This document shows, piece by piece, positions 1,924 to 22,835 of a stretch of DNA of 64,000 bases. Made by a program: the position numbers and the translations under genes. The notes below the pieces were generated by a model. That model was not told the DNA's origin and did no database searches. It saw only the letters and a program-made list of their open reading frames with translations. Position 1 is the stretch's first letter; each line of letters begins with the position of its first letter. Source of the DNA: Ostrea edulis (Eukaryota); the NCBI RefSeq assembly GCF_947568905.1, contig NC_079168.1:22196001-22260000 (forward strand). The letters run 5' to 3'.

Positions 1924-2005
1924 TCAGGTGTGCTCAAGATGTTCCATTCCTCTGATTCTGTCAGGTGTGCTCAAGATGTTCCATTCCTCTGATTCTGTCA
2001 GGTGT
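1924..2005. repeat. 37-bp tandem duplication (2.2 copies)
   Basis: tcaggtgtgctcaagatgttccattcctctgattctg at 1924 and 1961, followed by tcaggtgt. Confidence 0.9.

Positions 2006-2938: not shown

Positions 2939-2941
<3 letters not shown>

Positions 2942-2990
<49 letters not shown>
2942..2990. repeat. (TA)n microsatellite
   Basis: Uninterrupted TA run. Similar runs lie near 2500-2520, 11134-11186, 14425-14463 and 61325-61346. Confidence 0.95.
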
Positions 2991-2991
<1 letters not shown>

Positions 2992-4156: not shown

Positions 4157-4228
4157 TAATAAATAATAATAATAAATAAAATTTATATAGCGCCTTACAT
4201 AAAACAAATTACTCTAGGGCGCTTTACA
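4157..4228 (-). mobile_element. 3' tail of an L2/CR1-type LINE or of a SINE using that tail
   Basis: Minus strand reads tgtaaagcgccctagag...taaggcgctatataaat followed by (tta/ttta)n. This is the agcgcc/ggcgct stem plus AT-rich microsatellite end typical of L2-type tails (recognised from family knowledge). Confidence 0.55.
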
Positions 4229-4401
4229 AGGGTAGCGGTGAGGAAAGCAACAATAAAAAAAACAACAATTAAATGAAATTAAATGACAGTATGACATAAA
4301 ATCTTACATCTATAAAATTATCAAAATAAAACATTATTATTAAGATCGATACATGTAGCTAGAGTTGTTTTTGTTTTTGTTTGTTTGTTTTTTTGTTGTT
4401 G

Positions 4402-4434
<33 letters not shown>

Positions 4435-5082
4435 CACAATGCTAAGTATCTAAAATGTCAAAAGCTAAAACACTTTTGGCATAAATGTTCTAGGGAAAAA
4501 GTACGAGAAAATAAATACTTATAACGGATTGATATGACTAGTTTTCGTATCAGATTGCGTTATACGGAGGGAGAAAAGTAGTGGGGGATCCCCCTTTTAT
4601 GCTGAATCCCTCCCAGGTCTACATGTATGTAATTACCTTCTCTTTAATATTGTTAGATCGTCCATCACATTCACGTTTAATTATGGAAGGAAAAATTCAG
4701 ATTCTCCAATCAAAATTTTCTGATGTAATGTAAATCCATCAATTGATTTTTATTTCCATATCTCTTAATGTGTATAGATCCGTCCAAAAAATTTGGTGAA
4801 TTATCTACATGTAGCTTCATCAATAAATGATACAACTCCAACAACATTCATAGTTTCCATATTCAAAAATTTTTGAAAATTCATAATGTTCTTTTTAAAT
4901 AAAACCTCAAAAATGTCTCAAAATAAATGATGCTAAATTTGGAATAACCAAAAGCAGGAGACAATTTTTTAAATCCCCTTTACAATATTTCCATACAGAG
5001 CAGGACTATCTCTGATTAGCATATGATGTCTATACTTGACAATTGACGACATTGGTTATCGTTGATGTTTCCTTTTACGGAG

Positions 5083-5154
5083 TATATATAGAAGCTTTCG
5101 TACGTACATACTTAGGTAAAACATTGATCCCTTGCATACAGTACGCTACACAGG
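5083..5154 (+). promoter_or_regulatory. TATA box and non-coding first exon of secreted gene A
   Basis: TATATATAG at 5083; donor cagg|gtaaga at 5155; acceptor tttgtag| at 5294, directly before the signal-peptide exon. Confidence 0.55.
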
Positions 5155-5295
5155 GTAAGAATATCTGCAGTTTTTTTTATCATAGATTCTTTTCTTTTTT
5201 GTAAGGAAGGACTGATATTATATAGCCATTGATAGATTCACTTTGCATTTACATTAAATGGTGTTTTTTTTAATGTGACCATTTTACTTTGTAGA

Positions 5296-6227
5296 ATGCT
5301 TCTCTGGATAGTCTTTACCGCGTGTTTTCTGGCGGAAGTGTTTAGCCAACATGGTAAGCAGACATCTGGGTGAAAGAAATCATAATCACATTGCGACTAC
5401 AAAGTATTTTCACGAAATTTGCCTGTTTCTAAATCTGAAAACATACAACATATCAATTAAGTTTCTGAAGCTCTAAATTTGACGCGTCTTTTAAATAAAT
5501 TCTTGATTTTTCCAATAATATTGAGTGCATTTTTTCTCCAGCTGGACACAGTCACAATCATGATCACGGACACAGCGCTCACGGAGGTCACGGTGTTGAC
5601 CCGTGGGACATAAGACCAGTGGACCAAGGACCGGGTTTAGGTGAGGTTCACAGGGATACAAGGTTCACACCTGGGCGGGCGGGCCTACCCGCCCCCAGGA
5701 ACCCATTGAGGATCCCGCCGGGTCCCAGAAATCCATTGAGGATCCCGCCGGGTCCCAGGGGTCCACTGAGGACACATCGTCCCTCACATAGACCACTAGA
5801 CGGGCTGGATACTCTACGTGACCATTTCAACAGAGGCCTGCCAAATCATGGTGTCCCACCCCATAACGACCATCCACTTGTTCCGGATCCTTTCCCAGTT
5901 CTGCCAAATGTACATCCTTACCCAGACCCACATGTACCTGTTAGGCCGTTAGTCGACCCCCACTACCCGATTGATGTAAATCCTAGAAAGTATGGAAAAA
6001 GACCCGACAGGTATGGAAGGCGTTCGAGAAAAAACAAAAAGAACAAGAGAAAGCTGGAAAAGAAAATTAGGAAGGCACTGAAGAAACAGAAAAAGATGCA
6101 AAAGAAGAAGCAAAAGAAGGCACTGAGAAAACATTTAAAGAAGCAAAGAAAGATAAAGAAGGCAAAAATGCGATTAGAAAAACATGCAAGGGAGTTAAGG
6201 AGATTACAAAAAGGATACGGAAAGTAA
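5296..6227 (+). CDS. Gene A: secreted His/Pro-rich protein with Lys-rich basic C-terminal helix, 247 aa; join(5296..5353,5542..6227)
   Basis: Exon 5295-5353 encodes the signal peptide MLLWIVFTACFLAEVFSQH and ends G|gtaagc (phase 1). Acceptor tttttctccag| at 5541 continues in frame (HAGHSHNHDHGHSAHGGHGVDPWDIRP) into the tracked ORF 5619..6227. AATAAA at 6239. Confidence 0.85.
5694..5771 (+). repeat. 30-bp coding tandem repeat (PRNPLRIPPG x2 + PRGPLR) in gene A
   Basis: Units start at 5694 and 5724, with a partial unit at 5754. Confidence 0.9.
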
Positions 6228-6238
6228 AGATATGGCAG

Positions 6239-6244
6239 AATAAA
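6239..6244 (+). promoter_or_regulatory. Polyadenylation signal of gene A
   Basis: AATAAA 11 nt after the stop codon. Confidence 0.5.
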
Positions 6245-7249
6245 TGGCCTCAGGATGTTCTACAAATTCCTTGAATGATGTGTGACTGTAATTTGGTTCT
6301 TGTTGATTTCATTAACCGGTTGAACCAAAGATGCCTCCGAAAAGAAATCCGTTCTTCCACGTGTTAATCTTCGTGCGTTTCTTCCACATGTCAATTTTCT
6401 CCCTGTGATTTTCAATTTTATAAGGAGAGTGTTCTAAGTGATGTGAAACTTTTAACACGACGAATCAAAAGGATAGTGTGTCTTTTTATGCATGAATGAA
6501 GATACTAGCTACCTCTTCATCAATAATCCAGAGATACCCGTCAATTTCAAAACTGTAATTTCTATTAAGACAATGGAAAATCATCATGAAATGTGTTTAT
6601 ATCAGAAACTAGTTCATTTATCTTCATTTTATTCAATATATGTATATAAATTCATGGTGATATAATATCGTCTTTCATTACTTCATTTTGTTCATTAGAT
6701 AATTAAATAATGGTTAAATAAAATATTCTTCAGAGTTCTCAATCTTTTGTTTTCATGATTATTCTGGTATAGATTGAACTTTTTCTACTTCAATCGACGT
6801 CAGAAGAACGCTTCACGGATTTATCTGTCGTTAGCGATTGAGATGTTTGGCATCTGTCTATATGTCCAGAAGTTGACACTAGGATGAAATCTAGTGGAGT
6901 CAAATTAGTAGCATAAAAATAGCTCTAAGTCGTGATTACGTACATGTATGTACACGATAACAAGTGATAATAATGAGATAAAACGGTTGTCATTACGAGA
7001 TCAAGCTGTTATTACGATTAACAAAGTTGTAATAAATAGATAAAACGTCGTTAGACTGCAGAAAGTCGTAATTACGACTTTAAATATGTACAAGTGTCTT
7101 TGAATAGCGATGCAATAAAAACTTCATTTGATATATTGACAGAATAACTCATTAGGTCGTCACTTAATCAACTTCTTGCCTATTCGAACTTTTGATATGA
7201 CTGAATATCGGGATGTATGCCCACCCGATGTCACATATGCTTTACAGTT

Positions 7250-7520
7250 TATAAGATATCTCATAAATATATAAGATATCTTATTTGTTTTATAAGATAT
7301 CTCATAAAGTTTATGAGATATCTTATATATTTTATAAAGTTTATGAGATATCTTATAAAAATAGAAGATATCTTATAAATTTATTTTTATAAGATATCTC
7401 ATAAACTTTATAAGATATTTTTAACGTATATAAGATATCTTATAAAAGAGAAAGTTTATAAGAAATTTCATATATTCTATAAGATATCTCATATGATTTA
7501 CAGTTTATATGACATCTCAT
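7250..7520. repeat. Array of palindromic ATAAGATATCTTAT / ATAAGATATCTCAT motifs (probably a MITE interior)
   Basis: Nine exact GATATC cores at 7255, 7275, 7296, 7317, 7347, 7367, 7393, 7434 and 7483; degenerate cores at 7414 and 7511. Confidence 0.8.
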
Positions 7521-7951
7521 AAAATGTGTAACAAAAAAATAAATGAATAAAACCAATCAACAGGTTGATTTATCTAACAAATGAATTCAGAATTTGGTAT
7601 GCAAGTCAACTGTGGTTCTTCAAAAGAGACTGCACGTTGGTTAACAGTTTGTCCATTCTCACATTGATAAATTCTCATTCTTTCATATAATCAGAACTTG
7701 TAATAATAGGTTATATTTCTCTTGCGTGTCAGTACATAAACATTTACAAGAAAGAGTGTTTAACTTTACTATAGTAATTCATCCACTTATGAGTGATGGA
7801 TTCAGTAAGTAATCAAAAAATACTTTAAGGCGCTTCAGGAATTAAGTATGCCAGCGGTAGGCGTCGCAGTTCCTATACCCTTATATATTTTCAAAAGCGA
7901 AACTTAATGATGAACAGGGGGATTCCTGAAATTGTTTATTACGGCTACAAG

Positions 7952-9242
7952 TACAGGAACTGGTAAACCAGTAATTTTGTGTGTAATAATGATAGTAGGG
8001 GTATATCCAATATCACCTCCTAATAAAACAAACTACACCAGGAATGAAATGAGTTTTTACTCAAAACTTTGATTCAAAATAGCTCTAGAATTCTGCTTTT
8101 ATCGTCAGCCACTTTAAAGGGACTGATTCACGATTTCCCCCCAAATTTTGTTTTTCACTTTAAATGATCAAAATCTACAGTCTAATATGTTTAGAAGGTT
8201 TCATACAAAAAATTAAGGTTATTCATCATGACAGAGGCTCATTATATAGAGTCTATTATTTGTTTTGAAAACAAAAATTGAGGTGTGTTATTGTTTACGA
8301 AGTTTTCAAAATAAATGAATATTGATCCAAGTTTTTTTTTTTTTATATATCACATTTCAAGTATACTTAAGGTAAAATGTGTCATTTAAAAGTTAAAATT
8401 TGTGATTGTACAAAATGAAGATGCTTTGAATTACAAAATTAACGTTTCACAGGTTTGTTTGTTTACATAGAAAGACTCGAGTCTTTGTTTACATAACACA
8501 GAATCAAAGCTAAAATATTGCTCTTAACCTTGCATTCAGACGGTCCAAATTTTGGTTGTCAACATTAAATGAGCTATATTTTTAACTTTCAACATCAAAA
8601 ATGAAAAATATTTCTTCTGAAAAACGTGAACCAGTCCCTTTAAAGTTCATTCTGATCCAGTAATTCCAATATCTATGCCATTGATTCCACAGGAATTTTC
8701 AACAGTTCCTGGCGACCAATTTTTCGTGTCACCCTTATGTTTATTCTGATGGTCATGAACAACATCACTTCCGGTATCTTGTTTAGGAAGTCAACTGTTA
8801 CTAGTATATTTGAATATTGAACAACAATACATCTGTTTAAATTTTGTGATGCAGTTATATCAAACACAAATGTTTGAATACAAAAAACGCTCATATATAT
8901 ATTTATTCGATTAATGTAAACAAAAGTATAATATACATATATTTACCGGAAGTGAAGTTGTTCGTGGCCAAAAGGATAAAAACATGGATGACACGAAAAG
9001 TGGTTGCGAAGAACTGTTGAATGTTTCTGGTTACATGTGCCGATGAGAATGATTTTCATGGCTGGATTAATGGCGTAAATATTGAAATTACTGGATAAGA
9101 AAGAACTTTGAGGTGGCTAACGATAAAAGCAGAATTTCAGAGCTATTTTGAATTGAAGTTTTGAGTAAAACCTTGCGTTTTTATTAAGGGTTGGTATGGA
9201 ATAGACCCCTACTTTTTACAGACAAAATTACCAGTTCCTGTG
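7952..9242. mobile_element. Non-autonomous TIR DNA transposon, P-superfamily-like (7-bp TSD)
   Basis: Left end tacaggaactggtaa..ttttgtgtgtaa..agtagggg mirrors right end cccctact..ttacagacaaaattaccagttcctgtg. Direct repeat ctacaag at 7945-7951 and 9243-9249. Long internal imperfect inverted repeats at about 8700-9010. Confidence 0.7.
8118..8639. mobile_element. Kolobok-like MITE with TTAA TSD, nested in the P-like element
   Basis: ttaa|agggactgattcacg ... cgtgaaccagtccct|ttaa. Same family as 15144-15679, in the opposite orientation. Confidence 0.85.
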
Positions 9243-9315
9243 CTACAAGTTACACGTGTGAGGGAAAAGTCGTGCAGGAGTAGGTGCACAACTTACTTAA
9301 ATGATCTGACTAGTT

Positions 9316-9397
9316 ATCTTCTCTCTGTTTAGTAGGGGAGTTACGGTACTGTCACATCTTCTCTCTGTTTAGTAGGGGAGTTACGGTACTGTCACAT
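9316..9397. repeat. 40-bp perfect tandem duplication
   Basis: atcttctctctgtttagtaggggagttacggtactgtcac at 9316 and 9356. Confidence 0.95.
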
Positions 9398-10125
9398 TTC
9401 ATGAGTCGATGTAATGTGTATGATATTAGTCAAACGAAACGAAAATTGTGGGGAGGGAATAATGGAAATTCATTGCACCTCTAAGACTATGCGTGCATTT
9501 TGGAAGATCAGTAGGTCAAAATTGTTTATTATCTAATCTAAGAAGCAAACAAAGCTAAATAGGGTAAATCTAAAAGAAAAAATAGAGAAGAAAAGATACT
9601 TATGATAGCTATTTATACAAGATTTTGAGCTCGCTTGAATTTAAGATAATCGTGCTCTGGGACATTTTTTTAAATTCCTTTTGACATCTAATTTGTCGAA
9701 ATTTCAATTTTGTGCATCTCTTTTTTTTTTTTTTTTTTAGAATGCATGTATGTACATGAATTCAGAATTTAGTGTCTGTCAAATACTTGTACAAAATTCA
9801 TAATTATATTCAGAAGCTTTCTACGTGGGAGTAATACAAATGTTATGCAGTAATGTTTTACTTCATATACAATATAGGTGGTGTCGTTCTTCGCCTATCC
9901 GCACGTGACCACAACCCCTGTCTTCAGCAAGTGGTCAGCGAAAATGATTCTCCCCGCTATTTAGCAGGAAATGTTGTTATCCAAAATTCTGTTTATATTG
10001 TGTTGTTGCGATATATTTATATCATTTTATTAGAGTGTTAATTAATTATGCGTGTTTCTTTAAGCCCAGTTACGTACGACATTTGCGTATGACACAGAAT
10101 TAACATAGATCAATATAAAACACAC

Positions 10126-10218
10126 AGGTCAAAACACCCTCGGCTCTTATATAAACTCAATATAACTCGACGAAATCAATCTTCTTCGTACCTATCTAAG
10201 GGAAAACGCTGAAAAAAG
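10126..10218 (+). promoter_or_regulatory. Promoter (AGGTCAA, ACACCC, TATATAAA) and non-coding first exon of gene B
   Basis: TATATAAA at 10148-10155; donor aag|gtaaga at 10219; acceptor ttctag| at 10382, 2 nt before the ATG. Confidence 0.6.
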
Positions 10219-10384
10219 GTAAGAAACCAATCTGTGTTCCTATTTCATGGCTACATACCTGTAATTATATGAGTTTATGCACGTAATAGTTTTATGACAC
10301 CGAAACATGCAATGAGAAATCAAAATATACCATGTCCTGCTTATTTTATAAATACTGGAGTTCGTGATTTTTTTTATTCTAGAC

Positions 10385-11127
10385 ATGCATGGGGCTTCAG
10401 TGCTAACATCATATTTCCTGTGCATTGTACTTATTTTTGCAGAAGGTAATGTATTTTTTAAAATGTTCTTTTTCTTTCAAAATTTTAAAAAGTAAACAAA
10501 TTAGAATGATTCACACTGCTGCGGATAAGATTTGACCGCGGAGTGTGTTGTACTTTCTAGATCTCTCATTATCAAACCACATCGATGGGAATGCCATATC
10601 TAAAGTCAAGAAGATAAGTAAGTATATTGGTGTTTATATCTTATTTTAAGTTTTCACATACTATTCTGAGACTTTTAAATTTGTTCTAATTGAAATTCTA
10701 TTCATGGCTCAGGGCCGTAAGTAGGGTTCTAAATCAGGGGAGGCAGGGGATTGGGGGCCGCCGATTGACTTTACGACTGAAAATGACACTTTTTAAATCC
10801 CAATTTATCATGTTTGTGTTTCATTTGTACTATGTAAAGAATCGTAATATGGTGTCAAAGACAAAGGTGCTTGTCTTCATTTTAAACATATATCCTATAA
10901 TATAACATTTATATAATTTTATTTTCTTTTTTGCCAAAAAATCAGACGAGGCAGTTGCCTCGTCTGCCTCATCGGCAGTTACGGCCCTGTGGCTGTGGTG
11001 TACTTATTTTTGATTATAACAGATCCATTAGATTACACGCATCCTGTTGGCAGAAATGAAGGTGTTTTCAAACCCCTGTATGAGGAATTAAAAGACAAGG
11101 GAATAGAAAAAATAAGTAAGGAATACT

Positions 11128-11190
<63 letters not shown>

Positions 11191-11846
11191 AAATCATAGA
11201 CTTAATGTTTGAAACAATTCAATTGATATAATTTTAATGAACAAAGCAATCTGACATTTGTTACCTTGGTGTACTTTTAGATTCTGTTGATTTTAAACGT
11301 CCTATTGGTAAAAAGAATAGTCAGAAAGGGGAAGTAAGAACGGCGCTCAGTAAAACAGAATATAAGGGAGATAAAGCTGGTCTCCCTGGCAACCTCAGTC
11401 TAAAGCCATTCAAATTACGAAATGAGGGATTGGATGTACCAAGCACGAGCGAAGTTGGGAAAACCTACGATCCGCCAATATCAGACTTAACAAGACGTAA
11501 ACTTGGCTTAAATGTCCTCGGTATCAACAGTAAACCGAGGAGGAACAAGCAAAACGGACGGCGTTCGAGGAAAAACAGGAGGAGAGGTTTACTAGGGATC
11601 AAAAGGAAACTGCACAGGAGGCTTCGGAGGAAAAAGCTTCAAAGTAGAGCAAAAAATATTCGGAGGAAGAATAAATGGCGGACAGGGCGGAAACTGAAGC
11701 GGAAACATGGACATTTGAGTAGAAAACATGTAGAATTAAAGAGAAAACATAGACGGTTAAGGAGAAAACATAGAAAATTGCAACAGAGACTAAGGAATCT
11801 GGACAGTAAAAACAAAGATCCTAAAATTAACAACCCGATCTTATAA
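10385..11846 (+). CDS. Gene B: secreted Arg/Lys-rich protein with Leu/His heptad C-terminus, 258 aa; join(10385..10445,10561..10617,11023..11115,11281..11846)
   Basis: Signal exon MHGASVLTSYFLCIVLIFAE ends G|gtaatg. Two phase-1/phase-1 exons (57 and 93 nt) have canonical ag|/|gtaag sites. The last exon starts after gtacttttag| at 11281 and is open into the tracked ORF 11430..11846. All junctions keep the frame. Confidence 0.82.
10710..10989. mobile_element. MITE with 11-bp TIR and 5-bp TSD, in an intron of gene B
   Basis: cagggccgtaa ... ttacggccctg; tggct on both sides (10705-10709 and 10990-10994). Confidence 0.8.
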
Positions 11847-12000
11847 AGATTATAAAAATTTGACTAAACGTTTGTATATTTGCAATGATGTGATATCGTT
11901 TCTATACTATTAAATATTTAAAAGTATTACTTTATTAAAGCTCTCATTTGTGTATGTTTTAATGGATTCACCTGCTTAGCTGCTTAGGAGATGTCAACTC

Positions 12001-12097
12001 ACAGGGGGGGGGGGGGGGGGGGGGGGCAAAATGGCAACAAAATGAATTACCGCCAAAGGGTGGTACAACCCCCGTAATCCTCTCTAGATCCACCACT
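12001..12097. mobile_element. Truncated right end of a CAGTGGCGGATC-type MITE
   Basis: Poly-G followed by gtaatcctctctagatccaccact, which resembles the terminus of 29488-29920. Confidence 0.4.
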
Positions 12098-14126
12098 CAC
12101 TTTTTATGTTACGTTAAGTAATTACCTCATCTGCACAGATTCCCAGATTACACACATTTTTAGTGCATACCTTTCCTATAAAGGGTTCATTTAAAGTAAC
12201 TTTCTTAATCCAGTTCACAATTTAGCATATTTTTATCAATTGCTATAGCCCTGTATGACTGTATTTCATCTGTGGTCTGTACTTGTAAATGTAACACAAA
12301 AATGAAGAATTGTTGATTTCTAATATACTGCAATAATAGTATTTGATACATAGTTAATATTTCAATTTAACACAAACAGAATAGATCAGAAATGGTTTAT
12401 CAAACACCGGTCCAAGCTAAGGCTAGATAAATTGTATTATAATTTCTATACTAATATTTTTTTAAATGCTATAAAAATGGACTAAATTCGATAGACTCAT
12501 TTTCTTTCAAAAATCAAAGATAAAAATTAACTATAGATATTATCAATTGATGAACTGCTTTATTCATTATTTACTATGTATACGTACTAATAATGATAAA
12601 ATAAATTTTCTTTTCTTTTCTAAAACACAGACAAAATACATGTGAATCTTATGTACCTGTATAGAATAGTCTATGAAAACACAATTCACACTTATCATCC
12701 TACACTTAAATATCAAACGAAATGTATCCCTTAGGTAGTAAATCAGTGGGGGGGGGGGGATGTTTGGTTTTTAGGGGAGGGATTTCCCACAGTTCCTGTC
12801 GCTCCATCACCCGTCCCTCGATCGCGACATAACACATAACAATTCTATTCAATGAATTAACTGAAATTAAGAGTTAATTCTCATAATCTGTCAGCTTTTA
12901 AAATCGCTTAATCACTGCGTATGAATATTAATCTAACGCTTAAGCGCTCCATTCCGTAAGCAAGTGTGATATAAGAAATATCTGTTTATAATATAAGAGA
13001 TATCTCTTTATTATACTAAAAAGATCTAATATAATCTTATTATTTTTTTTCGAATCAATCCGACAAGGAAAGCAATTATTTCCACTATATTCTCTTTAAA
13101 GAAGTGGACTGGCACAGCCTGAAGGCATCAGCCATGACTGTAGACAATGCCTGTCCACTTCTCTAAAGTGACGTCCTCTGGTTTGTGATTGGTGATACAC
13201 GTGCGGTCCATGTAGCAAATGTTCGCACAATCAAAACGTGTACCTTAGTTTTTTTCCATCCTTCCCTTTATCTATGCAGAGACATGTGGTACACAAATTT
13301 GGTGCAATTACAAATGTTCAGTATCTTTTTTAAGAGAGGGAAGGGGGGGGGGGGGGGGGTCGCGGGTGCTAATTATGGAATACCGCGGTGTTCGATTGGG
13401 TCGCCTAATTCTAAAGGATAGAAGAAAACACCGTTATTAGACATACCCAAGCGCAAAGTTGGTACTCTTTTTAGTGTAAACATCATTGGAGACAACTACA
13501 TGAAGCTTATTATGGGTTATTCATAAAAATAGTTTGCACCATTACGAAGATCTTATGGAATTGTAACCCTCTCCCAAAAACGTCAGAATAAAACAAATCG
13601 GAGAGGGCTACATTATTGCAGCTATGGTTGCAGATATTCATTTGATTATTTGGTACATTACTTTACATAGACAACTTACAGATCAAGTTCGGAGATTGTA
13701 TTTTTGCTGATTTATGGCCCTTAGACAGAAAAATACCACAATACTCAGTTTCCGAACTTTTTTATTATTGTAATGCTCACGGATTTAGTACATTGCTTCA
13801 CCATAACAAGTTACAGATCAAGTTGGAGTTTTGTGAATTTTGAGGAATTCATCTTGGCGAATAAGATGTAATTGATTTGTATGCTTCTTAGCGAAATAAA
13901 GAGGGGTAGTCGTTGGGATAATGGAATATTTTTTCCGACGCTAAAAATTGTCGACGTACATGTATATGTAGGTCGAATTTTTTCTGTCCCGATTACAACT
14001 GATCACACACACACATACACACACACGCGCGCGCGCGCGACGACGACAACTGTATGTTTATTCTGTTGAACACATACACTTGGAAGTTAACTCCTTCAAA
14101 AAAATTGGGACATCAAAGTAATTCCG

Positions 14127-14189
14127 CAATCGTAACAACTCGGCCATTTCCGTAACCGGTTTACGGAAATGGCCGAGTTGTTACGATTG
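14127..14189. mobile_element. 63-bp near-perfect palindromic mini-element with 10-bp TSD (Mutator-like)
   Basis: 29-bp arms caatcgtaacaactcggccatttccgtaa and its exact reverse complement around ccggt; agtaattccg at 14117-14126 and 14190-14199. Confidence 0.85.
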
Positions 14190-14421
14190 AGTAATTCCGC
14201 TGGGTTTTTTTTCCGATTTGATATCAATTTATTTTCACTAGATTTGCACAGTTACATAGGTTTAATGAATTCATATATTCGTTTATTTACTACATGCATA
14301 GACTCAGACGTGAACATGTGGTGTTTCAACCCCTGTAAACAACTAATCAACAATGAACTTGTCCATATATATATAGTGCCTAGTGTGCAATATATAAAAA
14401 AAAAACCTGTATGTATATGTA

Positions 14422-14464
<43 letters not shown>

Positions 14465-15033
14465 CTCATAATTTGAAATAAGCTCTCATTGTTTTGATGA
14501 TTGTGATTATATGGGTTGGAGAATGTTTTCTAGGACATGAGTTATTTCAAACAAGACGAAGGATATGAAGGGGCCCAGTACATAGTCTTTTACAATATAT
14601 TCATGCGCGGCAGTGCGTGATGACGTAGAGAAATTGAACAAAGTTCAACTCCCAAAAACATATTCGTCTTGGAGATGTCCGTTATGGGACCTGTTTCCTC
14701 GGAAGAGGAAAGTACAGAAGTATTCCACACAACTTATTTTACGCGACATCGGTAGTCATCCAAACATGTAGGCCTACAGTGTATCTATATGTACAAGTAT
14801 ACAAATACGCATAATGTTGATATTAGAAATATATATTATATTGTTACAGTATGACCGCCTAAACCGTATTTACGGACTCGGCATGGCGCACTTCCTACAC
14901 GTTATATAAGGAAATAATTCTCGTGATTTTACTTGTTTTATTTAAATTTTCTTGTTTTTGTTTTCTGTAATTAATATTTATGAAATGCGCAATATGGTAC
15001 AAAATTAACTTTGAATTCATACATGACATGACT

Positions 15034-15125
15034 AGGTCAAGGCGTGACACCCGCATTTTTCATATAAAGCTCGATAAAACGTGCAACAATATTCAGAATA
15101 ATCCACGAGTATAAGCTAAATGCAG
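15034..15125 (+). promoter_or_regulatory. Candidate promoter and non-coding first exon, probably of gene C (distal)
   Basis: AGGTCAA at 15034, ACACCC at 15047, CATATAAA at 15061 (same ACACCC-N8-TATA spacing as gene B); strong donor cag|gtaagt at 15126. Confidence 0.4.
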
Positions 15126-15143
15126 GTAAGTTGTCATCCTTAA

Positions 15144-15679
15144 AGGGACTGGTTCACGATTTTTCTTAAAGGGACTGGTTCACGATTTTTTATAAAACTA
15201 TTTTTCATTTTTGATGGTAAACATTAAAAATATAACTCATTTAATATTGACAGCCAAACTTTTGACCTTCTAATGCAAGAATTAAAGCAATTTTTTAGCC
15301 ATAAATCTGTGTTAACAAAGACTTGAGTCTTTTTATGCATACAAACAAACAAGTGAAATATTGATTTTGTAATATAAAGCATCTTTATTTTGCATAGTCA
15401 CAATTTTTAACTTTTAGTGACACATTTACCCCAAAAATGCCACAAAATGTGAAAGGATATAATAAACTTAGGTCGATATCCATTTCTTTTGAAAATTTCA
15501 TAAACAATAACATACCGTAATCTTTGTTTACAAAACAAATAATAAACTCTCTAAAATGAACTTCTTTGATCATGTATAACCTTAATTTATATGTGAACTC
15601 TTTTAAACACAATAGACAGTAGATTTTGATCATTAAAAGTGAAAAACAAAATTTTGGGGAATATCGTGAATCAGTCCCT
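15144..15679. mobile_element. Kolobok-like MITE with TTAA TSD and a duplicated left terminus
   Basis: ttaaagggactggttcacgattttt occurs at 15140 and 15166; right end cgtgaatcagtccct|ttaa at 15679. Confidence 0.85.
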
Positions 15680-16079
15680 TTAAGGTTTATATAATACATG
15701 TGTATTTGCATTTAACGAGGTTTGCATCTGAGTTTTGGAGTATTGTCATTTTCTTCTTTTTTCGGAAGTAGATGTTTGATTTCTACATTGAAGGGGGTTA
15801 TGAAACTAGGGTTGTGGTGCTTATTATTGAGCTACAGTGTGTTAAACTTGACCTTTTTGCACTTGAAATTGTGTACAATATAGCATTTCGAAAAAAAAAA
15901 ATGGTCTTGCGTTGTCTTGTTATCACTTTCGTGCCCATTCATTCTCTAAGTATTTTCAAATTATGGACTTGCTACGTACGTTCGTGCGAACGTTATAAAA
16001 TGGGGGGGGGGGGGTTCCAGCAATTCACTTTTTGTCTAATGTTCTTTTTCAAATCTTAACATCTTTAAATCACATATGC

Positions 16080-16230
16080 ATGAAAGGCGAAGATAACGAA
16101 CAGTGATCAATCTCATAACTCCTATAAGGAATACAAAATAGAGAGTTGGGCGTACACGGACCCCTGGATATACCAGAGGTGGGATCAGATGCCTAGGAGG
16201 AGTAAGCATCCCCTGTCGACCGGTCACACC
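16080..16230 (-). mobile_element. Interspersed repeat, probably a retroelement 3' end (family not assigned)
   Basis: GC-richer island; minus strand ggtgtgaccggtcgacaggggatgcttactcctcctaggcatctgatcccacc resembles an abundant oyster repeat as I recall it (not checked). Confidence 0.4.
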
Positions 16231-17262
16231 GTAACATGTAACGTCTTAGTTTATGCAATATTTATTCATAAATAAGTTTATTTTAGTGTTTACAAACAAT
16301 GTCAAGTATAATTTAGATTGAGAAACAAGCCAAAAGGCTTATATTGATATCGCTCTAAACTTTCTTGGTACAGTATTTTTCAAATTGTTGATTTTTTTTT
16401 CCAAACATTCCGCTGATACTATCAGATATCATATACTATTTTGTACTATGCTTTTTTGATAAATATTAGGGATTTCAACGAATATTCGAATATTCTTTCG
16501 ATGAGATGATATTCGAATATGAAATTAAGATTCGAATATTCGGTTATACAGGTAAAACCGTATATATTTGGACATTTAGAGCTACAGAAAGCTACCGAAC
16601 GATTACCGAACATTCGTACGCAAGAACGGAAAATAGAAGCCAGTGTCCCATGCCAAAAAGTCACACTGCCATTAATATTGCGTGTAAAATGAAAGAAATT
16701 TTAAAAGTTTTTGGTTTTTTTAATGCAAAATTGACGCTGTGTTTGTGTGCACGATAATGCTCGAAACATGGAAAAGGCGGGTATGTTAAGCCCGGAGTGG
16801 GAGGACATGTCGTGTGTCGACCATACTTTACCGCTATGCATAAAACTGGCCCCTGGAATACAGAATGCGGCCTAACTTTTTTCAAAGTGTCGGAAACTCG
16901 TAGGTCTTGCTGCGTGTTAGACGATCGATTTATCAAAAAGAGCCCCAATCAAACTTCCCCTTTTATGCTTTAATAGATAGATATAAGCTACACGAAAAAC
17001 AGGGGCCGCGAGGTAATAAACATACATGTGACCCTGCGTTTTCATGAACATTGATCCTGCACGTGGCCAAGACATTTCACCTCAAATCTCATTCAAGAAA
17101 AATGTTATCAAATTCTGAAATGTGGTCATTTTTTTTATGGTTCATGGCTCTATCTCTTTATTAAACAATGTTTATTGTGTGTGCGCTTTCTTTCTGGTAT
17201 GAAACATACTGTTAAAGAGGAACAACACGTCATCATTACGGCTGACTTCCTTTCGAAATACG

Positions 17263-17460
17263 ATCCGGGGATCCGGGCTCTATAGAATAGGTCCTAAGTA
17301 CCCCTTGCTTGTCGTAACAGGCGACTTAATGGGGCGGTCCTTCGGATGAGACCGCAAAAACCGAGTCCCCGTGTCGCAGCGGTTGTGGCACGATAAAGAT
17401 CCCTCCCTGCTCAAAGGCCGTAAGCGCCGAGCATAGGCCTAAATTCTGCAGCCCTTCACT

Positions 17461-17500
<40 letters not shown>

Positions 17501-17532
17501 AGGGACGTTACACAATATACAACCAACCAACC
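17263..17532 (+). mobile_element. 5'-truncated bivalve SINE (probably Meta/MESC-type central domain)
   Basis: cttgtcgtaacaggcgact, then gtggcacgataaagatccctccctgctcaaaggcc, and a (CAAC)n tail. Related to the 20685-20979 element. Confidence 0.65.
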
Positions 17533-19178
17533 TCTCGAACTACAAGGAGAAAATTAAATACATATTACCTATGTATTCTGTTTCCTGTTCACGTTTATTG
17601 CTTAGCAAAGTGGTTAATGTGCAAGGTTGCCGTTTTGTTCGTAGATCTATAGAAGGTTTAGAAAATCTTGTGAGTTAGTCCTCCTCAAGTATTTGTATGG
17701 TTATAAAACTTGAAACTTTCCTGTGGCGTTTGAATATGGCATCAATTAGATTCAAGTCTAGATTTGTAAGATGTTTCATAACAGACACGGAGGAGGGCTA
17801 CTCGCACCTTGCACAATAAAAACGACATATCGTAGGATATCCATTGTCAACGACCAACAGATGCGAGAAATGAGCTGATCTAAGACTAGCATGCACAATG
17901 TGTAACAAGTTCGTTTGTCATGTTTCCATTGTAAAATCAAAACTCAAATACAATAAATGTAAATGTATGCATGGACATGACAAATCAGCATCAACAGCTG
18001 TACTAGGCCTCAAGACCATAGACTGAGAATTATGGAAAGCCATTGGGGACCCTCAAGTCATGTTCTATATAATCCATTGTATCAATCCTGACCTATCCAT
18101 ATTGACAACCCAGGATGACAACTTGGTCATACCCCAACATTAACCTGGTATTTCCAACTTAAAATCATGACCAAGTCAAGATGCATCTTTGTCATCTCAT
18201 GATTACAGTCATGGCCTGCGCAAGATGTTTAAATGGTCTTGTATTTAAAGAGGGATAACTCTAATCTAATCGTTAATGTTTCCATTGCTGAACATTCGCT
18301 ATCCCTAATGGAGTAACTGCAAAATGTCCTTACTAACAACAGAAAATGTACCACTATTAAATGGTAACACAAATGCTTGTTGAAAATTCGAATTCACAGA
18401 AACACTTCATTGTCGAATCATTTCGGATGGAAATACAGTTTTACACTACAATTACAATGAACCTCAGACAATGGCTTTCTGTAGACATTTTCATGCAGTC
18501 GGCTTCCACCATGCTGTACACGCTGATTGCTTCAATTTCCTGACGGTTATTAGAAATGAAAGTTAGTGATATTTCTTAATGATGACGCCGCCATGCATCG
18601 ACGCTACATGTATGTCAGTTCGAAACAAAGCGGACAGCTTCTCTTACACAGGCGTCTGACCACTGTACCATGCACCCTGGGCACATGACCACTGTACCAG
18701 TAAACACACACATACATATACACACACAGGCACATGACCATGCACCGTGCAACCCTTACTATCTCTGTTTTTCCTCCAACAAAATTGATGTTGGCGATTC
18801 ATGATTTTAGATATGTGATTATTCTCTACCCTACAATAAATATTGTTATAACAGGGTAGCAATCAACTTTTTGAATACTTAACAGAACATATTTTATTTC
18901 CAGTCAAGACCCCCCCCCCCCCCCCCAGGGGCAGCATGAAAATGTATACATATATCAGTCCAAAAAAAAGTTATTGCATGACACTTAGTTTAAATACAAT
19001 GCCAATGTAGTAATTGCATATATTGTTCAAAAATAAATTTCCAAACTATATTTAAAATTGATGGCTCTTCAGAACACAATATGTATATGAATTTTTGTTG
19101 TGTAGTGAAATTCTGTACAGTTTTTTCCCTCTATTACATCACAAACAGGTTTTCTTTCATCATCAACAGACTTTTCAC

Positions 19179-19926
19179 CAGAGCTCCAGATAATTTTTTA
19201 CCACAAAGAGTATTTACCCCCTGATTTTCAAATCAATGAGTATTTTGCTTTTCAGAAAAATTCAAAAGTGTATTTTGTTAATTTACTGATTATCTTTGCT
19301 CTTTTGCACAGAAGATGTCACCAGATAAACGATACTTCTTCCGTTAAACTTTAACTTAAAGTTTATACTAAAAGGCCGCTCCAGCTATTTACGGGGAAAA
19401 TCCTTTGTAGTTCTTTTTATTAAAACTATTCATTGTCATTTGGAATTTGATATTTATTATTGATGCATTAAATTTGAATATGTTGATCAGACACTCAGTC
19501 ACATGATTATGATCCAATTCTGTATATCATTCGTCCACGATTGATAATACAAGTTTTTTCTCTGTGCTTTCGACCGCACACTAACTCTTTAAGAAAGAAA
19601 GTATAACAGGTAGGCTTATATAATAGTGTTCTGAGTTAACTCTTCCAATTTTTCAAAATTGTGATTGTCATCAAAACGTATTTCATAGTGCTAAATATCA
19701 TGCATGATCAAGCCCTGGGCTAACCTCAATTCATATGAATAGATAATTCATATTTATATCATACTACATGTATCACAAATACACGGACTAATACGCATTA
19801 CTTTGGGAGTGTAAAGCGTATTTACATTCGCTAATGCGTAATTGTACGCATGATTTTCAACTTAAATGCGTATTTGGTCAAATTTAATGATTATTTACGC
19901 TGATACGCACCTTATCTGGAGCTCTG
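19179..19926. mobile_element. P-superfamily-like MITE
   Basis: 15-bp TIR cagagctccagataa / ttatctggagctctg; flanks ttttcac and atttcac (7-bp TSD with one mismatch). Confidence 0.75.
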
Positions 19927-20236
19927 ATTTCACAATTGATAAATAAAAAAAGAATCTCGTCTCCTAATGAACCTGAGTTACATTTGTTACAGACTCGTTC
20001 ATTCCTAGTAATATTAGAGTATCTACCAACTTTAATAATTAATTTATGATACATAAATTTACAGATATATATTCTGAAAATAAATTTTTTTGACTTTATA
20101 GATAATTTTCAAAACCAAAGTGCTCATTAAGTTTAAAACATGTATGTGCATAGTTTCCCATCGATCAATTTATTTCGATTATTGTACCAGATTTCAGTGT
20201 ATTTATCACAGAGTAATTTCCTTAGAATTTTCTTAA

Positions 20237-20555
20237 GGATGTATGCTACACCAGAGAAATTTGATGTAGATGAAAAGTGGAGGATATGTACAATAATATT
20301 TGAAGTTGAAAATTATCAAATGTACTTTATTTTGTCAAAAAATACAGTTTTAGTAGAAGGTAACCTGAAAAAAAAAAATTAAATCCCTGCTGGACTCAAA
20401 CCTGCGATCTACAGTTCAGCAGTCGGTATTCTAACCTACTGAGCTACTCTTCTAGGTATTTAAATGGAAAAGGAAAAGTCAAATATTGCTGATATCGATT
20501 TTTCCATCCATGTTTTTAAAGGAAGTCAGCCATTATGACGATGTAGAGTACTACC
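20237..20555. mobile_element. Kolobok-like TTAA MITE carrying an internal tRNA-like segment
   Basis: ttaa|ggatgtatgctacacc ... atgtagagtactacc|ttaa. The minus strand contains tagctcagtagg (A-box) and ggtttgagtcc (B-box). A second copy lies at 51784-52915. Confidence 0.75.
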
Positions 20556-20684
20556 TTAAGCAACCAATATGGGGTGGATAGAGAATCTCAAACTATGGGA
20601 ATAACTGTCATGACCCCTATGACCTCCGTGAGGTTACTAAGGGATAATTTTGTAAGGCCAGGAAACCATTGGTAAAAACGATAA

Positions 20685-20979
20685 CTTGATTGATTGATTG
20701 GTTTACGTCGAGAATGTTTCACTCAGACGTCAACAGCTGTAGGTGAAGTAGGCTTAGTGTTCAGGGCCGTGGCAGTGAGGTTTCTTTAACGTGCCAACGT
20801 CTGCCGCGACACGGGACCTCTGGGGTTTTTTTTAAGGTCATATCCGAGAGACCCATGATTGCCGAGTTTTTTGGCGAAGGAGCGATCACTATTTATGTTA
20901 ACGTCATTAGGTTTGACGCGGCCATGGACCTCCCGGTTACGAAGCGCACGCGCAGAACCACTGAGCTACCGCGACCGGT
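20685..20979 (-). mobile_element. tRNA-derived SINE with 8-bp TSD
   Basis: Minus-strand head accggtcgcggtagctcagtggtt (A-box); (TCAA)n tail; aacgataa at 20677-20684 and 20980-20987. Confidence 0.75.
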
Positions 20980-21674
20980 AACGATAATTTGATATGAATT
21001 TATCAACATTTGTATACTTGTAGGTTAAACCGGATATACCACATACATTTACATTTCCATTGTTTTTGTCTGTGATACCTTTACAAACTGTAACGATAGC
21101 CATTTCCTCATGAATGTGCTACAGTTGTGGACAATGCGCGTATGAATATTGATAAATATAGTACATCTATTTCAACGGCTGGGAAATCCGATAGAAATGA
21201 CAGTAGAATGTACATATACAAAATAAATTTCAGTTTTGAACATACATGAGGGAATGACCTGCAACACCTCACGCCGGTGTACTATTCCTGAGGCGCATTA
21301 CATATTTCCGTGTGAAGCCTCGCAATTCATACCTTTAAAAAAAAAAGATATTTAGATAATTTTGGTGTGTTGATAATACATGCACTAGCTTTTCTTGGAG
21401 GATGACGAAAATATGCCAAAATTAAAAGTACCGAAGTTTCTATTATAATCATAATTGCATAAAATGAAATTTGCTATAAACTAAATTGCAGTATTTCAAA
21501 CTACTTTTCTAATAAAAATTCGCCAAGTATCCCCAACGCCAAAATTATACGATAAACAGTAAAGCAAACCAAAACAATGGTATGATTTACAAAACACCAC
21601 GAAACGCTTTTAAAAATTGTATGGTTAATCACATGTACAATTGTATATACCTGATATTTTTTTTTATTTTAGGA

Positions 21675-22774
21675 ATGTGGAGAATTATCCTGTTGATATA
21701 CTTTCTTATCCTCGTTTCCTGTCAAGGTATCATGGCTACTAGTGTATGACAATTCATCGGGAATAAATGACAGTATCTTCCAAGATATTCATGTAAAACA
21801 AGATAAATAGCTACTGAAGAGTGAAAACATTTCACTGTGATACAAACAGTTTAGTGTAGTCTTTATTTTCAGATCATCTGAAGAAAGATGAAGATCATAA
21901 AGGAGGTGGACGACCAAACAACCGAGAGCGAGGGTGGCTTGATCAGCTGGGTGATTCTCATCCGGGGCGAGCAGTAGGAGACATGGCGACTAAGTTAGAG
22001 AAAGTGGATAACGGAATACAGGACAAATCCGCTTCTATTTTGGACACAAATGAATCCCATAACCAAAAGAGTCGGCAAAACAAATCTAACTCCCAATTTG
22101 GAAGAAGTCGATCGAAGAAAATCAAATCCAAACAGGGAAAAGGTCGACAAGGTAAAACTAGCAATTCCCATCCCGGAAAAGGAAGAGGTCAACAAAATGA
22201 TTTTGACTCTCACCCCGGAAGAGGTCGACAAGATAAATTTGGTGATTCCCATCCCGGGAAAGGAAGAGGTCGACAAGATAAATTCGGTGATTCACATCCC
22301 GGGAAAGGAAGAGGTCGACAAGACAAATTTGGTGATTCCCATCCCGGGAAAGGAAGAGGTCGACAAGACAAATTCAGTGATTCTCATCCCGGGAAAGGAA
22401 GAGGTCGACAAGACAAATTTGGTGATTCCCGTCCCGGGAAAGGAAGAGGTCGACAAGACAAATTCGGTGATTCCCATCCAGGAAAAAGGAGAGGCACACA
22501 GCAGAATAAAGGATCTGACAATACTTACACAGACCAAATCGCTCTGCATTCTATTTTAGGTATACCGGCAAAGACATTGGGAAATAAAGGGATTGCCAAG
22601 AAGACAAACAAACGTGGATGGGAAATGCGTAAACCCGGGGAAAGGGAACGAACGAAAAAGAAAATGAATAGAAAAAGAGGAAGAGGGCACGGCAAAAACA
22701 AAAATGGAAATAAGAGGAACAAGCCGCGGAACAGTGGGCGTGGAAAGAAGTACGGGGGTAGGAAGTGGTTATAA
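21675..22774 (+). CDS. Gene C: secreted Gly/Arg/Lys-rich protein with 15-aa tandem repeats, 317 aa; join(21675..21726,21873..22774)
   Basis: Acceptor ttttag| at 21672; ATG at 21675; signal peptide MWRIILLIYFLILVSCQ ends G|gtatca (phase 1; read-through hits TGA). Acceptor ctttattttcag| at 21872 continues in frame (DHLKKDEDHKGGGRPNNRERGWLDQLGDSHPG) into the tracked ORF 21983..22774. AATAAA at 22830. Confidence 0.83.
22163..22513 (+). repeat. 45-bp coding minisatellite (DSHPGKGRGRQDKFG), 8 units
   Basis: Units start at 22163, 22205, 22244, 22289, 22334, 22379, 22424 and 22469; the first two are 42 and 39 bp. Confidence 0.95.
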
Positions 22775-22829
22775 GTTTTACGCGAGCTTTGAAAGCGACA
22801 TTATATGTGTTCTGTGTCACTTCATTGAT

Positions 22830-22835
22830 AATAAA
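22830..22835 (+). promoter_or_regulatory. Polyadenylation signal of gene C
   Basis: AATAAA 55 nt after the stop codon. Confidence 0.5.

What the first reader, a model, noticed from the sequence alone, without database searches (positions are those of the whole stretch)
5083..22835. Tandem cluster of three secreted, polycationic, low-complexity proteins with one shared gene layout
Seen: three same-strand genes in 18 kb. Each has an ATG 1-2 nt after a splice acceptor, a 17-20-codon hydrophobic signal exon ending in phase 1, and one large last exon ending in a very basic tail (A: 38 K/R in the last 70 aa; B: 45 K/R in the last 96 aa; C: G/R/K/N-rich). The ORF track misses all three signal peptides, so the genes look like random basic ORFs. 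Known: bivalves secrete cationic low-complexity proteins as linear antimicrobial precursors (myticalins, Cg-Prp, molluscidin), adhesive or byssal components and shell-matrix proteins (KRMP-type). I do not recognise these three as any named member. Inference: a co-regulated, fast-evolving secretion cassette descended from one ancestor, in which each paralog gained a different repeat module (His/Pro, His-Leu zipper, RG-rich 15-mer).
Basis: partly seen in the sequence, partly recalled or inferred. Interest (0 to 1): 0.85.

Follow-up and report, generated by a model that had tools for sequence, protein, structure and literature searches.

The report
Oyster-only cluster of secreted polycationic proteins
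Three neighbouring flat-oyster genes really do encode secreted, cysteine-free, very basic, mostly disordered proteins, and the trio is conserved across oyster genera, but they are already annotated as uncharacterized, their role is unknown, and their shared ancestry is not shown.

Summary
The window is Ostrea edulis. Contigs from two runs of a related Ostrea, which the tool only guessed to be RNA, confirm three of B's junctions. No paper mentions these genes, and two carry spurious names.

The trio A-B-C lies in the same order and strand in Saccostrea echinata and Crassostrea angulata. Crassostrea has an extra A-like copy. A profile of family A found only oyster proteins among 1.84 billion representatives.

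A and B are each predicted as signal peptide, then about 130-155 disordered residues, then a confident 70-90-residue polybasic amphipathic helix. C has a 15-residue DSHPGKG(R/K)GR repeat conserved between genera and a Gly/Asn/Arg/Lys-rich tail with no helical periodicity.

Common ancestry is not demonstrable. A versus B is marginal and C matches neither. The shared exon layout also occurs in mussel myticalin genes. Co-regulation is untested, and the promoters share no motif.

Most likely these are extracellular polyanion-binding polycations. I favour humoral or mucosal defence (about 0.35), with matrix or adhesive proteins close behind. They are new oyster-restricted families of a familiar kind. 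Interest is moderate.

The parts
5015..5092 (+). Gene A proximal promoter: a block conserved in four oyster species (ATTAGCAT..ATGTC.AT..TGACA..TTTCC) ending in the TATA box at 5085-5092
   Evidence: Four-species alignment
5117..5154 (+). Gene A non-coding exon 1. The start is inferred from the TATA box. The GGTAAG donor after 5154 is conserved in four species.
   Evidence: inferred, not seen in reads
5295..5353 (+). Gene A signal-peptide exon (ATG at 5296, MLLWIVFTACFLAEVFSQH, ends in phase 1)
   Evidence: identical to XP_048736097.2; orthologous junction spliced in Crassostrea contigs
5542..6227 (+). Gene A last coding exon: His-X repeat, Pro/His-rich disordered region, and a polybasic amphipathic helix (protein residues 176-244) ending in GYGK
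   Evidence: covered by contigs of X1-X4
5694..5772 (+). 30-nt (10-aa, PRNPLRIPPG) tandem repeat in A. It is Ostrea-specific; Crassostrea has GPLGHLDGPR repeats at the same place.
10200..10218 (+). Gene B non-coding exon 1 (5' end at or upstream of 10200; TATA at about 10147-10155)
   Evidence: Joint 10218/10383 and an adapter-fused 5' end in X1/X2 contigs
10383..10445 (+). Gene B signal-peptide exon (ATG at 10385, phase 1)
10561..10617 (+). Gene B mini-exon 2 (phase 1-1, 19 codons)
11023..11115 (+). Gene B mini-exon 3 (phase 1-1), starting with the conserved module LDYTHPVGR
11281..11846 (+). Gene B last coding exon: a second module (VDFKRPIGK), conserved GKTYDPPIS, and a polybasic helix (protein residues 160-248)
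11703..11779 (+). 21-nt (heptad, RKHxxLx) repeat in B's tail, absent from the Saccostrea and Crassostrea orthologues
21673..21726 (+). Gene C signal-peptide exon (ATG at 21675, MWRIILLIYFLILVSCQ, phase 1), nearly identical in Saccostrea and Crassostrea
21873..22774 (+). Gene C last coding exon: DSHPGKGRGRQDKFG repeats and a Gly/Asn/Arg/Lys-rich tail without helical periodicity, ending KKYGGRKWL
22217..22494 (+). 45-nt (15-aa) tandem repeat of C, 6.2 copies, 92% matches. The unit is conserved between genera but homogenised within each species.

Best explanation
The region holds three real genes, and at least A and B show up in run contigs. They represent three oyster-family-restricted (Ostreidae) protein families kept as neighbours in one order and orientation since before Ostrea, Saccostrea and Crassostrea diverged. 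Shown or directly computed: each product starts with a cleavable-looking signal peptide encoded by its own short exon. The O. edulis mature proteins have no cysteine and a pI of about 11. A and B are predicted as a long disordered region followed by one confident 70-90-residue helix carrying +36 to +42 net charge, with a narrow Leu/Ile/Met/Ala stripe. C is a conserved His/Gly/Lys/Arg 15-mer array plus a Gly/Asn/Arg/Lys-rich tail. Inferred mechanism: after secretion the C-terminal polycation acts as an electrostatic clamp for extracellular polyanions such as microbial envelopes, sulfated mucus glycans or acidic matrix. It probably folds into a helix only on binding. The conserved N-terminal modules add metal- or pH-dependent binding; these are the (His-X)n stretch and VDPW..RPLDQGPG in A, the D[FY]x[HR]P[VI]G[RK] exon modules in B, and the DSHPGKG repeats in C. 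A conserved Gln at the predicted mature N-terminus of family A suggests a pyroGlu block. A conserved aromatic-Gly(-basic) C-terminus in family A, and in C of O. edulis, suggests C-terminal amidation. Both point to passage through a regulated secretory pathway. The biological role I commit to is humoral or mucosal host defence. In this reading they are large polycations that work like molluscidin- or histatin-type peptides, by binding polyanions and metals rather than by classical pore formation, because only about 20% of tail residues are hydrophobic. Confidence is about 0.85 for the structural description and about 0.35 for the defence role. The single figure given for this explanation, 0.4, weights the two. 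Common ancestry is open: about 0.5 for A-B and about 0.3 for C.
For: The gene models equal the public annotation. B's junctions appear in contigs of two runs, with A and B both present. The A orthologue is spliced in Crassostrea contigs. Synteny A-B-C holds in S. echinata and in C. angulata as A-A2-B-C. The A profile hits only 6 oyster proteins among 1.84e9 representatives. AlphaFold2 gives A residues 22-175 below pLDDT 55 and helix 176-244 at pLDDT 89-98. For B it gives helix 160-248 at pLDDT 92-98. Helical amphipathic periodicity is present in every A and A2 tail (p<0.01) and in B_Oe (p=0.02), and absent in C. The C repeat is 72% identical between Ostrea and Crassostrea in the annotated frame, against 47-57% in the other frames. 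All three genes have TATA-box promoters. Myticalins are a precedent for gill-expressed, cysteine-free, probably amidated cationic bivalve defence peptides with a similar 5' gene layout (PMC5577615).
Against: There are no tissue, stage or challenge expression data, and no protein-level evidence. The proteins are 230-300 aa, far larger than known bivalve antimicrobial peptides. They lack furin-type R-x-[KR]-R sites outside B's tail, so release of small peptides is not indicated. The tails are too polar for a membrane-lytic helix. B's polybasic tail is weak in Crassostrea (12 K/R in the last 60 aa), so the tail is not the conserved core of that family. The promoters share no motif. Lineage-restricted repetitive secreted proteins in bivalves are more often mantle or shell-matrix products.
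Confidence: 0.4

Rival explanations
1. They are structural extracellular matrix components: basic shell-matrix, periostracum or ligament proteins, or the polycationic partner of the larval or adult cement. In this reading the polybasic tail binds acidic or phosphorylated matrix proteins or mineral. The His, Tyr-Gly and Lys motifs serve metal or oxidative cross-linking or coacervation.
For: They are lineage-restricted, repetitive, low-complexity, tandemly arranged secreted proteins with TATA promoters and in-frame repeat length changes. That is the usual profile of mantle secretome genes. Basic matrix proteins exist, for example KRMP with a basic domain plus a Gly/Tyr domain (PMC4498902). The His-rich, Lys-rich and Tyr-Gly motifs recall adhesive and metal-cross-linked proteins (my own knowledge).
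Against: The C. gigas A orthologue's ids were absent from the three held supplementary files of one oyster shell multi-omics paper, a weak negative because ids may differ. There is no Gly/Tyr-rich, Asp-rich, chitin-binding or other matrix-type domain. Tyr content is low. There are no expression data.
Confidence: 0.3
2. A, B and C are paralogues from one ancestral signal-exon-plus-body gene, with sequence similarity eroded and only layout and position kept, as in the vertebrate SCPP cluster.
For: The genes share strand and tandem position. All have a short non-coding exon 1, an ATG 1-2 nt after the acceptor, and a phase-1 intron 1-3 codons after the predicted signal cleavage site. The same holds for A2 and for the orthologues. 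A and B of O. edulis share the heptapeptide GRRSRKN (p<0.002) and a marginal profile score. A and B share one predicted architecture. Family A has duplicated in tandem in Crassostrea, so duplication happens at this locus.
Against: There is no significant similarity of C to A or B. A-B similarity is absent in Saccostrea and for A2 versus B. The same 5' layout and phase-1 intron occur in unrelated mussel myticalin genes, so the layout may be common among bivalve secreted effector genes.
Confidence: 0.35
3. They are fast-evolving gamete or reproductive secretions, such as acrosomal, egg-coat-interacting or seminal proteins.
For: The proteins are secreted, very basic, taxon-restricted and rapidly diverging with repeat turnover. 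Few spliced transcript contigs of the C. gigas orthologue were found in the collection, which could mean a rarely sampled tissue.
Against: The rough pN/pS of about 0.5 is not above 1. Short motifs and A's promoter are strongly conserved. There are no expression data.
Confidence: 0.08
5. They are not secreted. They are nuclear or nucleolar basic proteins whose hydrophobic first exon is mis-annotated, as the automatic names 'splicing factor 3B subunit 4-like' and 'PP1 regulatory subunit 10-like' would suggest.
For: K/R-rich tails resemble nuclear localisation signals. Atlas structure neighbours are long-helix nuclear or cytoskeletal proteins at TM below 0.35.
Against: A hydrophobic N-terminal exon with a small residue at -1 is conserved in every orthologue of all three families. 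It is spliced in contigs from sequencing runs. The automatic names rest on composition only, since Pfam finds nothing.
Confidence: 0.03

Closest known systems
Myticalins (Mytilus linear cationic antimicrobial peptides; PMC5577615)
   Same: Both are bivalve, taxon-restricted, multigenic, cysteine-free and cationic (pI above 11), with a probable Gly-directed C-terminal amidation. Both have a non-coding exon 1, a 5'UTR intron right before the ATG, and a phase-1 intron.
   Different: Myticalin precursors are short: signal peptide, short mature peptide, Lys-Arg site, then an anionic C-terminal extension of 35-75 aa. Here the mature proteins are 230-300 aa and the C-terminus is the most basic part. 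There is no anionic propeptide, and the phase-1 intron sits right after the signal peptide. There is no sequence similarity, and the tissue is unknown.
cgMolluscidin (C. gigas gill dibasic-repeat antimicrobial peptide; as described in PMC5577615)
   Same: Both are from oysters, unstructured, rich in dibasic repeats and very cationic. The tails here have 10-22 dibasic pairs.
   Different: [quoted passage not shown] The proteins here have signal peptides, are much larger, and carry conserved non-basic modules.
KRMP and shematrin basic shell-matrix proteins of pearl oysters (PMC4498902)
   Same: Both are secreted, basic, lineage-restricted, modular low-complexity bivalve proteins. Both have a basic region plus Tyr/Gly near the C-terminus.
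   Different: KRMP-3 is 101 aa, with a Lys-rich region followed by a Gly/Tyr-rich region. Here the basic region is C-terminal, helical in A and B, and 70-90 aa long, and there is no Gly/Tyr domain. There is no sequence similarity. Neither mantle expression nor shell incorporation is shown.
Vertebrate SCPP gene cluster (caseins, enamel and salivary proteins including histatins); from my own knowledge
   Same: It is a tandem cluster of fast-evolving secreted disordered proteins that share little beyond exon layout: non-coding exon 1 and the signal peptide in exon 2. Histatins are His-rich, cationic, metal-binding mucosal defence peptides.
   Different: It is an analogy only, with no homology. 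SCPP introns are phase 0. Common ancestry of the oyster trio is not demonstrated.

Membership tests
Myticalins | Signal peptide followed by a short cationic mature peptide | tested here: not met
   A signal peptide is present, but the mature parts are about 228, 238 and 300 aa.
Myticalins | Conserved Lys-Arg site followed by an anionic C-terminal extension of 35-75 aa | tested here: not met
   The last 70 aa hold 28-38 K/R and only 3 D/E. There is no anionic extension.
Myticalins | Three exons, 5'UTR intron right before the ATG, second intron in phase 1 | tested here: inconclusive
   The ATG lies 1-2 nt after the acceptor and the next intron is phase 1. However, exon 2 here holds only the signal peptide, and B has two extra exons (for the comparison).
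Myticalins | Conserved signal-peptide sequence (MKGxxLLLLTIxxALCMIxECEG) showing sequence homology | tested here: not met
   The signal peptides here are MLLWIVFTACFLAEVFSQ, MHGASVLTSYFLCIVLIFAE and MWRIILLIYFLILVSCQ. The profile search returns only oyster proteins.
Myticalins | Gill-specific expression and antibacterial activity | not testable with these tools
cgMolluscidin | Short peptide made of dibasic residue repeats | tested here: inconclusive
   The tails have 17, 22 and 10 dibasic pairs, but the proteins are 4-6 times longer and have other conserved modules.
cgMolluscidin | Precursor without a signal peptide | tested here: not met
   All three genes, and all their orthologues, have a hydrophobic signal exon.
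KRMP | About 100-aa protein with a Lys-rich basic region followed by a Gly/Tyr-rich region | tested here: not met
   The proteins are 247-317 aa. The basic region is C-terminal and there is no Gly/Tyr-rich domain.
KRMP and other shell-matrix proteins | Mantle expression and presence in the shell matrix | not testable with these tools
   One shell multi-omics paper's three held supplementary files lack the C. gigas orthologue's ids. This is a weak negative.
Any Pfam, Rfam or solved-fold family | Significant profile match | tested here: not met
   Pfam best E-values were 0.15 and 0.88, below cut-off. Rfam gave none. The Atlas gave no usable feature hit and TM below 0.35.

The most novel reading that the evidence does not exclude
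The trio may be an oyster-specific secretion module of large, amidated, metal-responsive polycations with no counterpart outside Ostreidae. It would be either a new class of protein-sized antimicrobial polyelectrolytes or the missing cationic partner of the oyster's phosphoprotein-rich cement or matrix coacervate. In this reading A, B and C arose from one ancestral gene in the SCPP manner.
Probability: 0.15. Interest if true: 0.65.

Novelty: new variant of a known kind. Interest (0 to 1): 0.4.

Why it matters
If the defence or coacervate reading holds, these would be the first described oyster-wide families of large secreted polycations. That bears on oyster mucosal immunity; O. edulis stocks are limited by Bonamia and other diseases. 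It also bears on bio-inspired adhesives and antimicrobial polymers. The locus offers a compact test of how disordered secreted proteins keep short motifs, a conserved promoter and synteny while the rest of the sequence turns over. As it stands, it is an annotated but unstudied orphan cluster of a type common in bivalve genomes. Two members carry misleading automatic names that should not be propagated.

Tried and rejected
- **Fourth copy at 57439-58047.** This ORF has the same length as A's ORF but is unrelated in sequence.
- **Protein word-index search with C.** It found nothing, not even the species' own protein, so C orthologues had to be read from synteny loci.
- **Shared B/C motif.** The apparent (S/T)HP.G(R/K) motif is not supported by a profile test.
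- **B as a diverged A2.** Crassostrea has a separate B orthologue with its own signal exon.
- **Possible B remnant in C. virginica.** The tblastn hit at L004:16891-17004 is spurious.
- **Upstream C. angulata genes.** The 131-aa and 129-aa genes are small single-pass membrane proteins, not cluster members.
- **Logan contigs for the O. edulis A protein.** L022 and L023 are unspliced genomic DNA, as are most C. gigas contigs. They say nothing about expression.
- **Literature.** Searches by LOC or XP id, peptide strings, run accessions and descriptive terms all returned nothing.
- **Fold searches.** I did not run them, because only single helices are modelled with confidence.
- **Tissue of expression.** It could not be determined.

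Full report
**Identity of the window and check of the observation**

The window is Ostrea edulis: assembly GCA_947568905.1, record OX387708.1, near 22.2 Mb. This gives open frames of 247 aa (A), 258 aa (B) and 317 aa (C).

- A: CDS 5296-5353 + 5542-6227.
- B: CDS 10385-10445, 10561-10617, 11023-11115, 11281-11846.
- C: CDS 21675-21726 + 21873-22774.

All introns are GT/AG. Each signal exon ends in phase 1. The ATG sits 1, 2 and 2 nt after an AG.

The public annotation calls genes of 247, 258 and 317 aa at exactly these starts. A is XP_048736097.2, misnamed 'splicing factor 3B subunit 4-like'. B is 'uncharacterized protein LOC125651555', 100% identical to my model. These are the only three strongly basic ORFs in the 64 kb. 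An ORF of equal length at 57.4 kb is unrelated.

**Evidence from sequencing runs**

One reads call was allowed, and I spent it on 5090-11089. Two runs of a related Ostrea, about 90-95% identical, are labelled RNA only by the tool's guess.

- Their contigs show B's joints 10218/10383 (non-coding exon 1 to the signal exon), 10445/10561 and 10617/11023.
- One contig fuses an Illumina adapter to B's 5' end at 10200.
- The same runs hold contigs over A's last exon.
- Two small RNA libraries hold 100%-identical contigs of A's basic tail.

A's junction 5353/5542 was not seen directly. The equivalent intron is spliced out in two contigs of the Crassostrea orthologue. C was not covered. Contigs cannot rank expression, and these runs were selected using these very sequences. 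Co-occurrence of A and B is therefore only weak support for co-expression.

**Relatives and synteny**

A has orthologues in four other oysters, at 34-44% identity:

- Saccostrea echinata (P0002);
- Crassostrea gigas (LOC105339576);
- C. angulata (LOC128177378);
- C. virginica (LOC111129586).

A profile of the family, searched against 1.84 billion cluster representatives, found six proteins, all from oysters. The family is restricted to Ostreidae as far as these data go.

In S. echinata the next two same-strand genes are a B orthologue (196 aa, model rebuilt) and a C orthologue. The C signal peptide there, MWRIVLLVYFLILVSCQ, is almost identical to that of O. edulis.

In C. angulata the order is A, an A-like tandem copy (A2), B, then C. 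B there is 179 aa and has its own signal exon at L003:15927-15990, a model I built. The public model appears to join A2's signal exon to B's exons. C. virginica has A and A2 within the 10 kb fetched. The trio therefore predates the split of these genera.

**What is conserved and what is not**

Family A keeps a series of short motifs:

- Gln at the predicted mature N-terminus;
- a (His-X)n stretch;
- VDP(W/F)xV(R/Q)PLDQGPG;
- PLDGLxxLRxxFxR;
- PRKYGxRP;
- the start of the basic helix, LRKNKRKLQKKIRKAxKKH;
- an aromatic-Gly(-basic) C-terminus.

A's Pro-rich 10-mer repeat is Ostrea-specific. Crassostrea has a different repeat at the same place.

Family B keeps a module, [DE][FY]x[HR]P[VI][GW][RK], at the start of two consecutive phase-1 exons. 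It also keeps GK(T/I)YDPPIS between Ostrea and Saccostrea. B's polybasic tail is strong in Ostrea, moderate in Saccostrea and weak in Crassostrea. The His/Leu heptad repeat is O. edulis-only.

Family C keeps the signal peptide and the unit (F)GDSHPGKG(R/K)GR. Identity to Crassostrea is 72% in the annotated frame, against 47-57% in the other frames. Within each species the units are homogenised: RGRQDK in Ostrea and KGREEK in Crassostrea. That pattern is concerted evolution.

A rough pN/pS for A, from the partial list of differences to the related Ostrea, is about 0.5. In-frame length changes occur in the tails.

**Predicted structure**

AlphaFold2 models A as disordered from residue 22 to 175 and as a single helix at 176-244 with pLDDT 89-98. 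It models B as disordered at 28-155 with a helix at 160-248, pLDDT 92-98.

Fourier analysis shows α-helical amphipathic periodicity in the tails of all A and A2 proteins (p<0.01) and of B in O. edulis (p=0.02). C shows none; its tail is 33% Gly+Pro+Asn.

The helices carry +36 and +42 net charge with only 19-24% hydrophobic residues. That is too polar for a classical membrane-inserting peptide and fits polyanion binding. The O. edulis mature proteins have no Cys. A and C have no furin-type sites. Pfam, Rfam and the ESM Atlas give nothing usable.

**Common ancestry**

I compared real sequences against shuffles that preserve local composition.

- An A-family profile scores B of O. edulis at p~0.03, B of Saccostrea at p~0.10 and C at p~0.56.
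- A C-repeat profile finds nothing in A or B.
- A and B of O. edulis share GRRSRKN (p<0.002) and a marginal Smith-Waterman excess (p~0.04). The Saccostrea pair shows nothing, and A2 versus B shows nothing.

The shared layout is real and is conserved in the orthologues: a short non-coding exon, the ATG right after the acceptor, and a phase-1 intron just after the signal cleavage site. Mussel myticalin genes have the same 5' arrangement and a phase-1 intron (PMC5577615). Layout alone therefore cannot carry the claim. I put A-B paralogy at about 0.5 and C at about 0.3.

**Co-regulation**

All three genes have TATA boxes. Their 355-nt upstream regions share no 7-10-mer beyond chance. By contrast, A's own proximal promoter has a block that is nearly invariant across four oyster species (window 5015-5092). 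That block is better conserved than the protein. It argues for tight regulation of A and gives no link to B or C.

**Function**

No paper mentions these genes, their ids or their peptide strings. One oyster shell multi-omics paper's held supplementary files do not list the C. gigas orthologue's ids.

From the anatomy, I infer secreted polycations whose C-terminal tail clamps onto extracellular polyanions and whose N-terminal modules add metal- or pH-dependent binding. I commit to humoral or mucosal defence as the most likely role (about 0.35). The reasons are the cysteine-free cationic design, the amidation-type ends, the TATA promoters and the myticalin and molluscidin precedents. A matrix or adhesive role is almost as likely (about 0.3). 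Reproductive, prohormone and nuclear readings are minor.

**Verdict**

These are three oyster-restricted, annotated but unstudied families of a familiar general kind. They have an unusual protein-sized architecture of a disordered region plus a long polybasic helix, and the trio is held in conserved synteny. Interest is moderate.

Noticed in passing
window 5015-5092: The proximal promoter of gene A has a block (ATTAGCAT..ATGTC.AT..TGACA..TTTCC..TATATATA) that is nearly invariant in O. edulis, S. echinata, C. angulata and C. virginica. The encoded proteins are only 34-44% identical.
   Followed up: partly
window 10710-10989: A 280-bp MITE-like element with perfect 11-nt terminal inverted repeats (CAGGGCCGTAA) lies in intron 2 of gene B. 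A contig from a small RNA library matches exactly these bounds, on the minus strand.
   Followed up: partly
window 8114-8644: This interspersed repeat has very high summed contig depth and many internal joints in the runs laid. It is probably a multi-copy transposable element between genes A and B.
   Followed up: no
window 16109-16260 and 17304-17456: These short stretches are similar, at the protein level, to ORFs in the Saccostrea and C. virginica loci. They lie outside the three genes and are probably transposable-element fragments.
   Followed up: no
window 23486-25207: A single-exon 573-aa ORF with an N-terminal B-box zinc finger (Pfam PF00643) lies directly downstream of gene C on the same strand. 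It looks like a TRIM-type gene.
   Followed up: partly
L003:13399-16925 (C. angulata): The public 199-aa gene model appears to join the signal exon of the A-like copy A2 to the exons of the B orthologue. B has its own signal exon at L003:15927-15990, and A2's body ORF ends at 14044.
   Followed up: partly
L003:9897-10224 and proteins P0023/P0024: Exon 1 of Crassostrea A contains an in-frame upstream ATG. It gives the annotated isoform a 16-aa extension (MALRSLYLLSPQDPNG) in front of the signal peptide. The run contigs L020 and L021 retain intron 1 and reach upstream of the TATA box.
   Followed up: no
L004:12526-13443 (C. virginica): A long tandem satellite between A and A2 is open in three frames, with units such as SSRTVTVYCVQQNGYSLFCPAERLQFIL.
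   Followed up: no
L003:1-2052 and 4685-6678 (C. angulata): Two small same-strand genes lie upstream of A. They encode single-pass membrane proteins with a poly-Ile/Val segment and a Gln/Pro/Gly/Tyr-rich C-terminus. No counterpart was found in window 1-5000.
   Followed up: partly
window 6098 (12-nt gap in the X2 contig): The related Ostrea has an in-frame 4-codon deletion in A's polybasic tail. C. virginica A has a 15-aa duplication in its tail. Tail length is evolutionarily labile.
   Followed up: no
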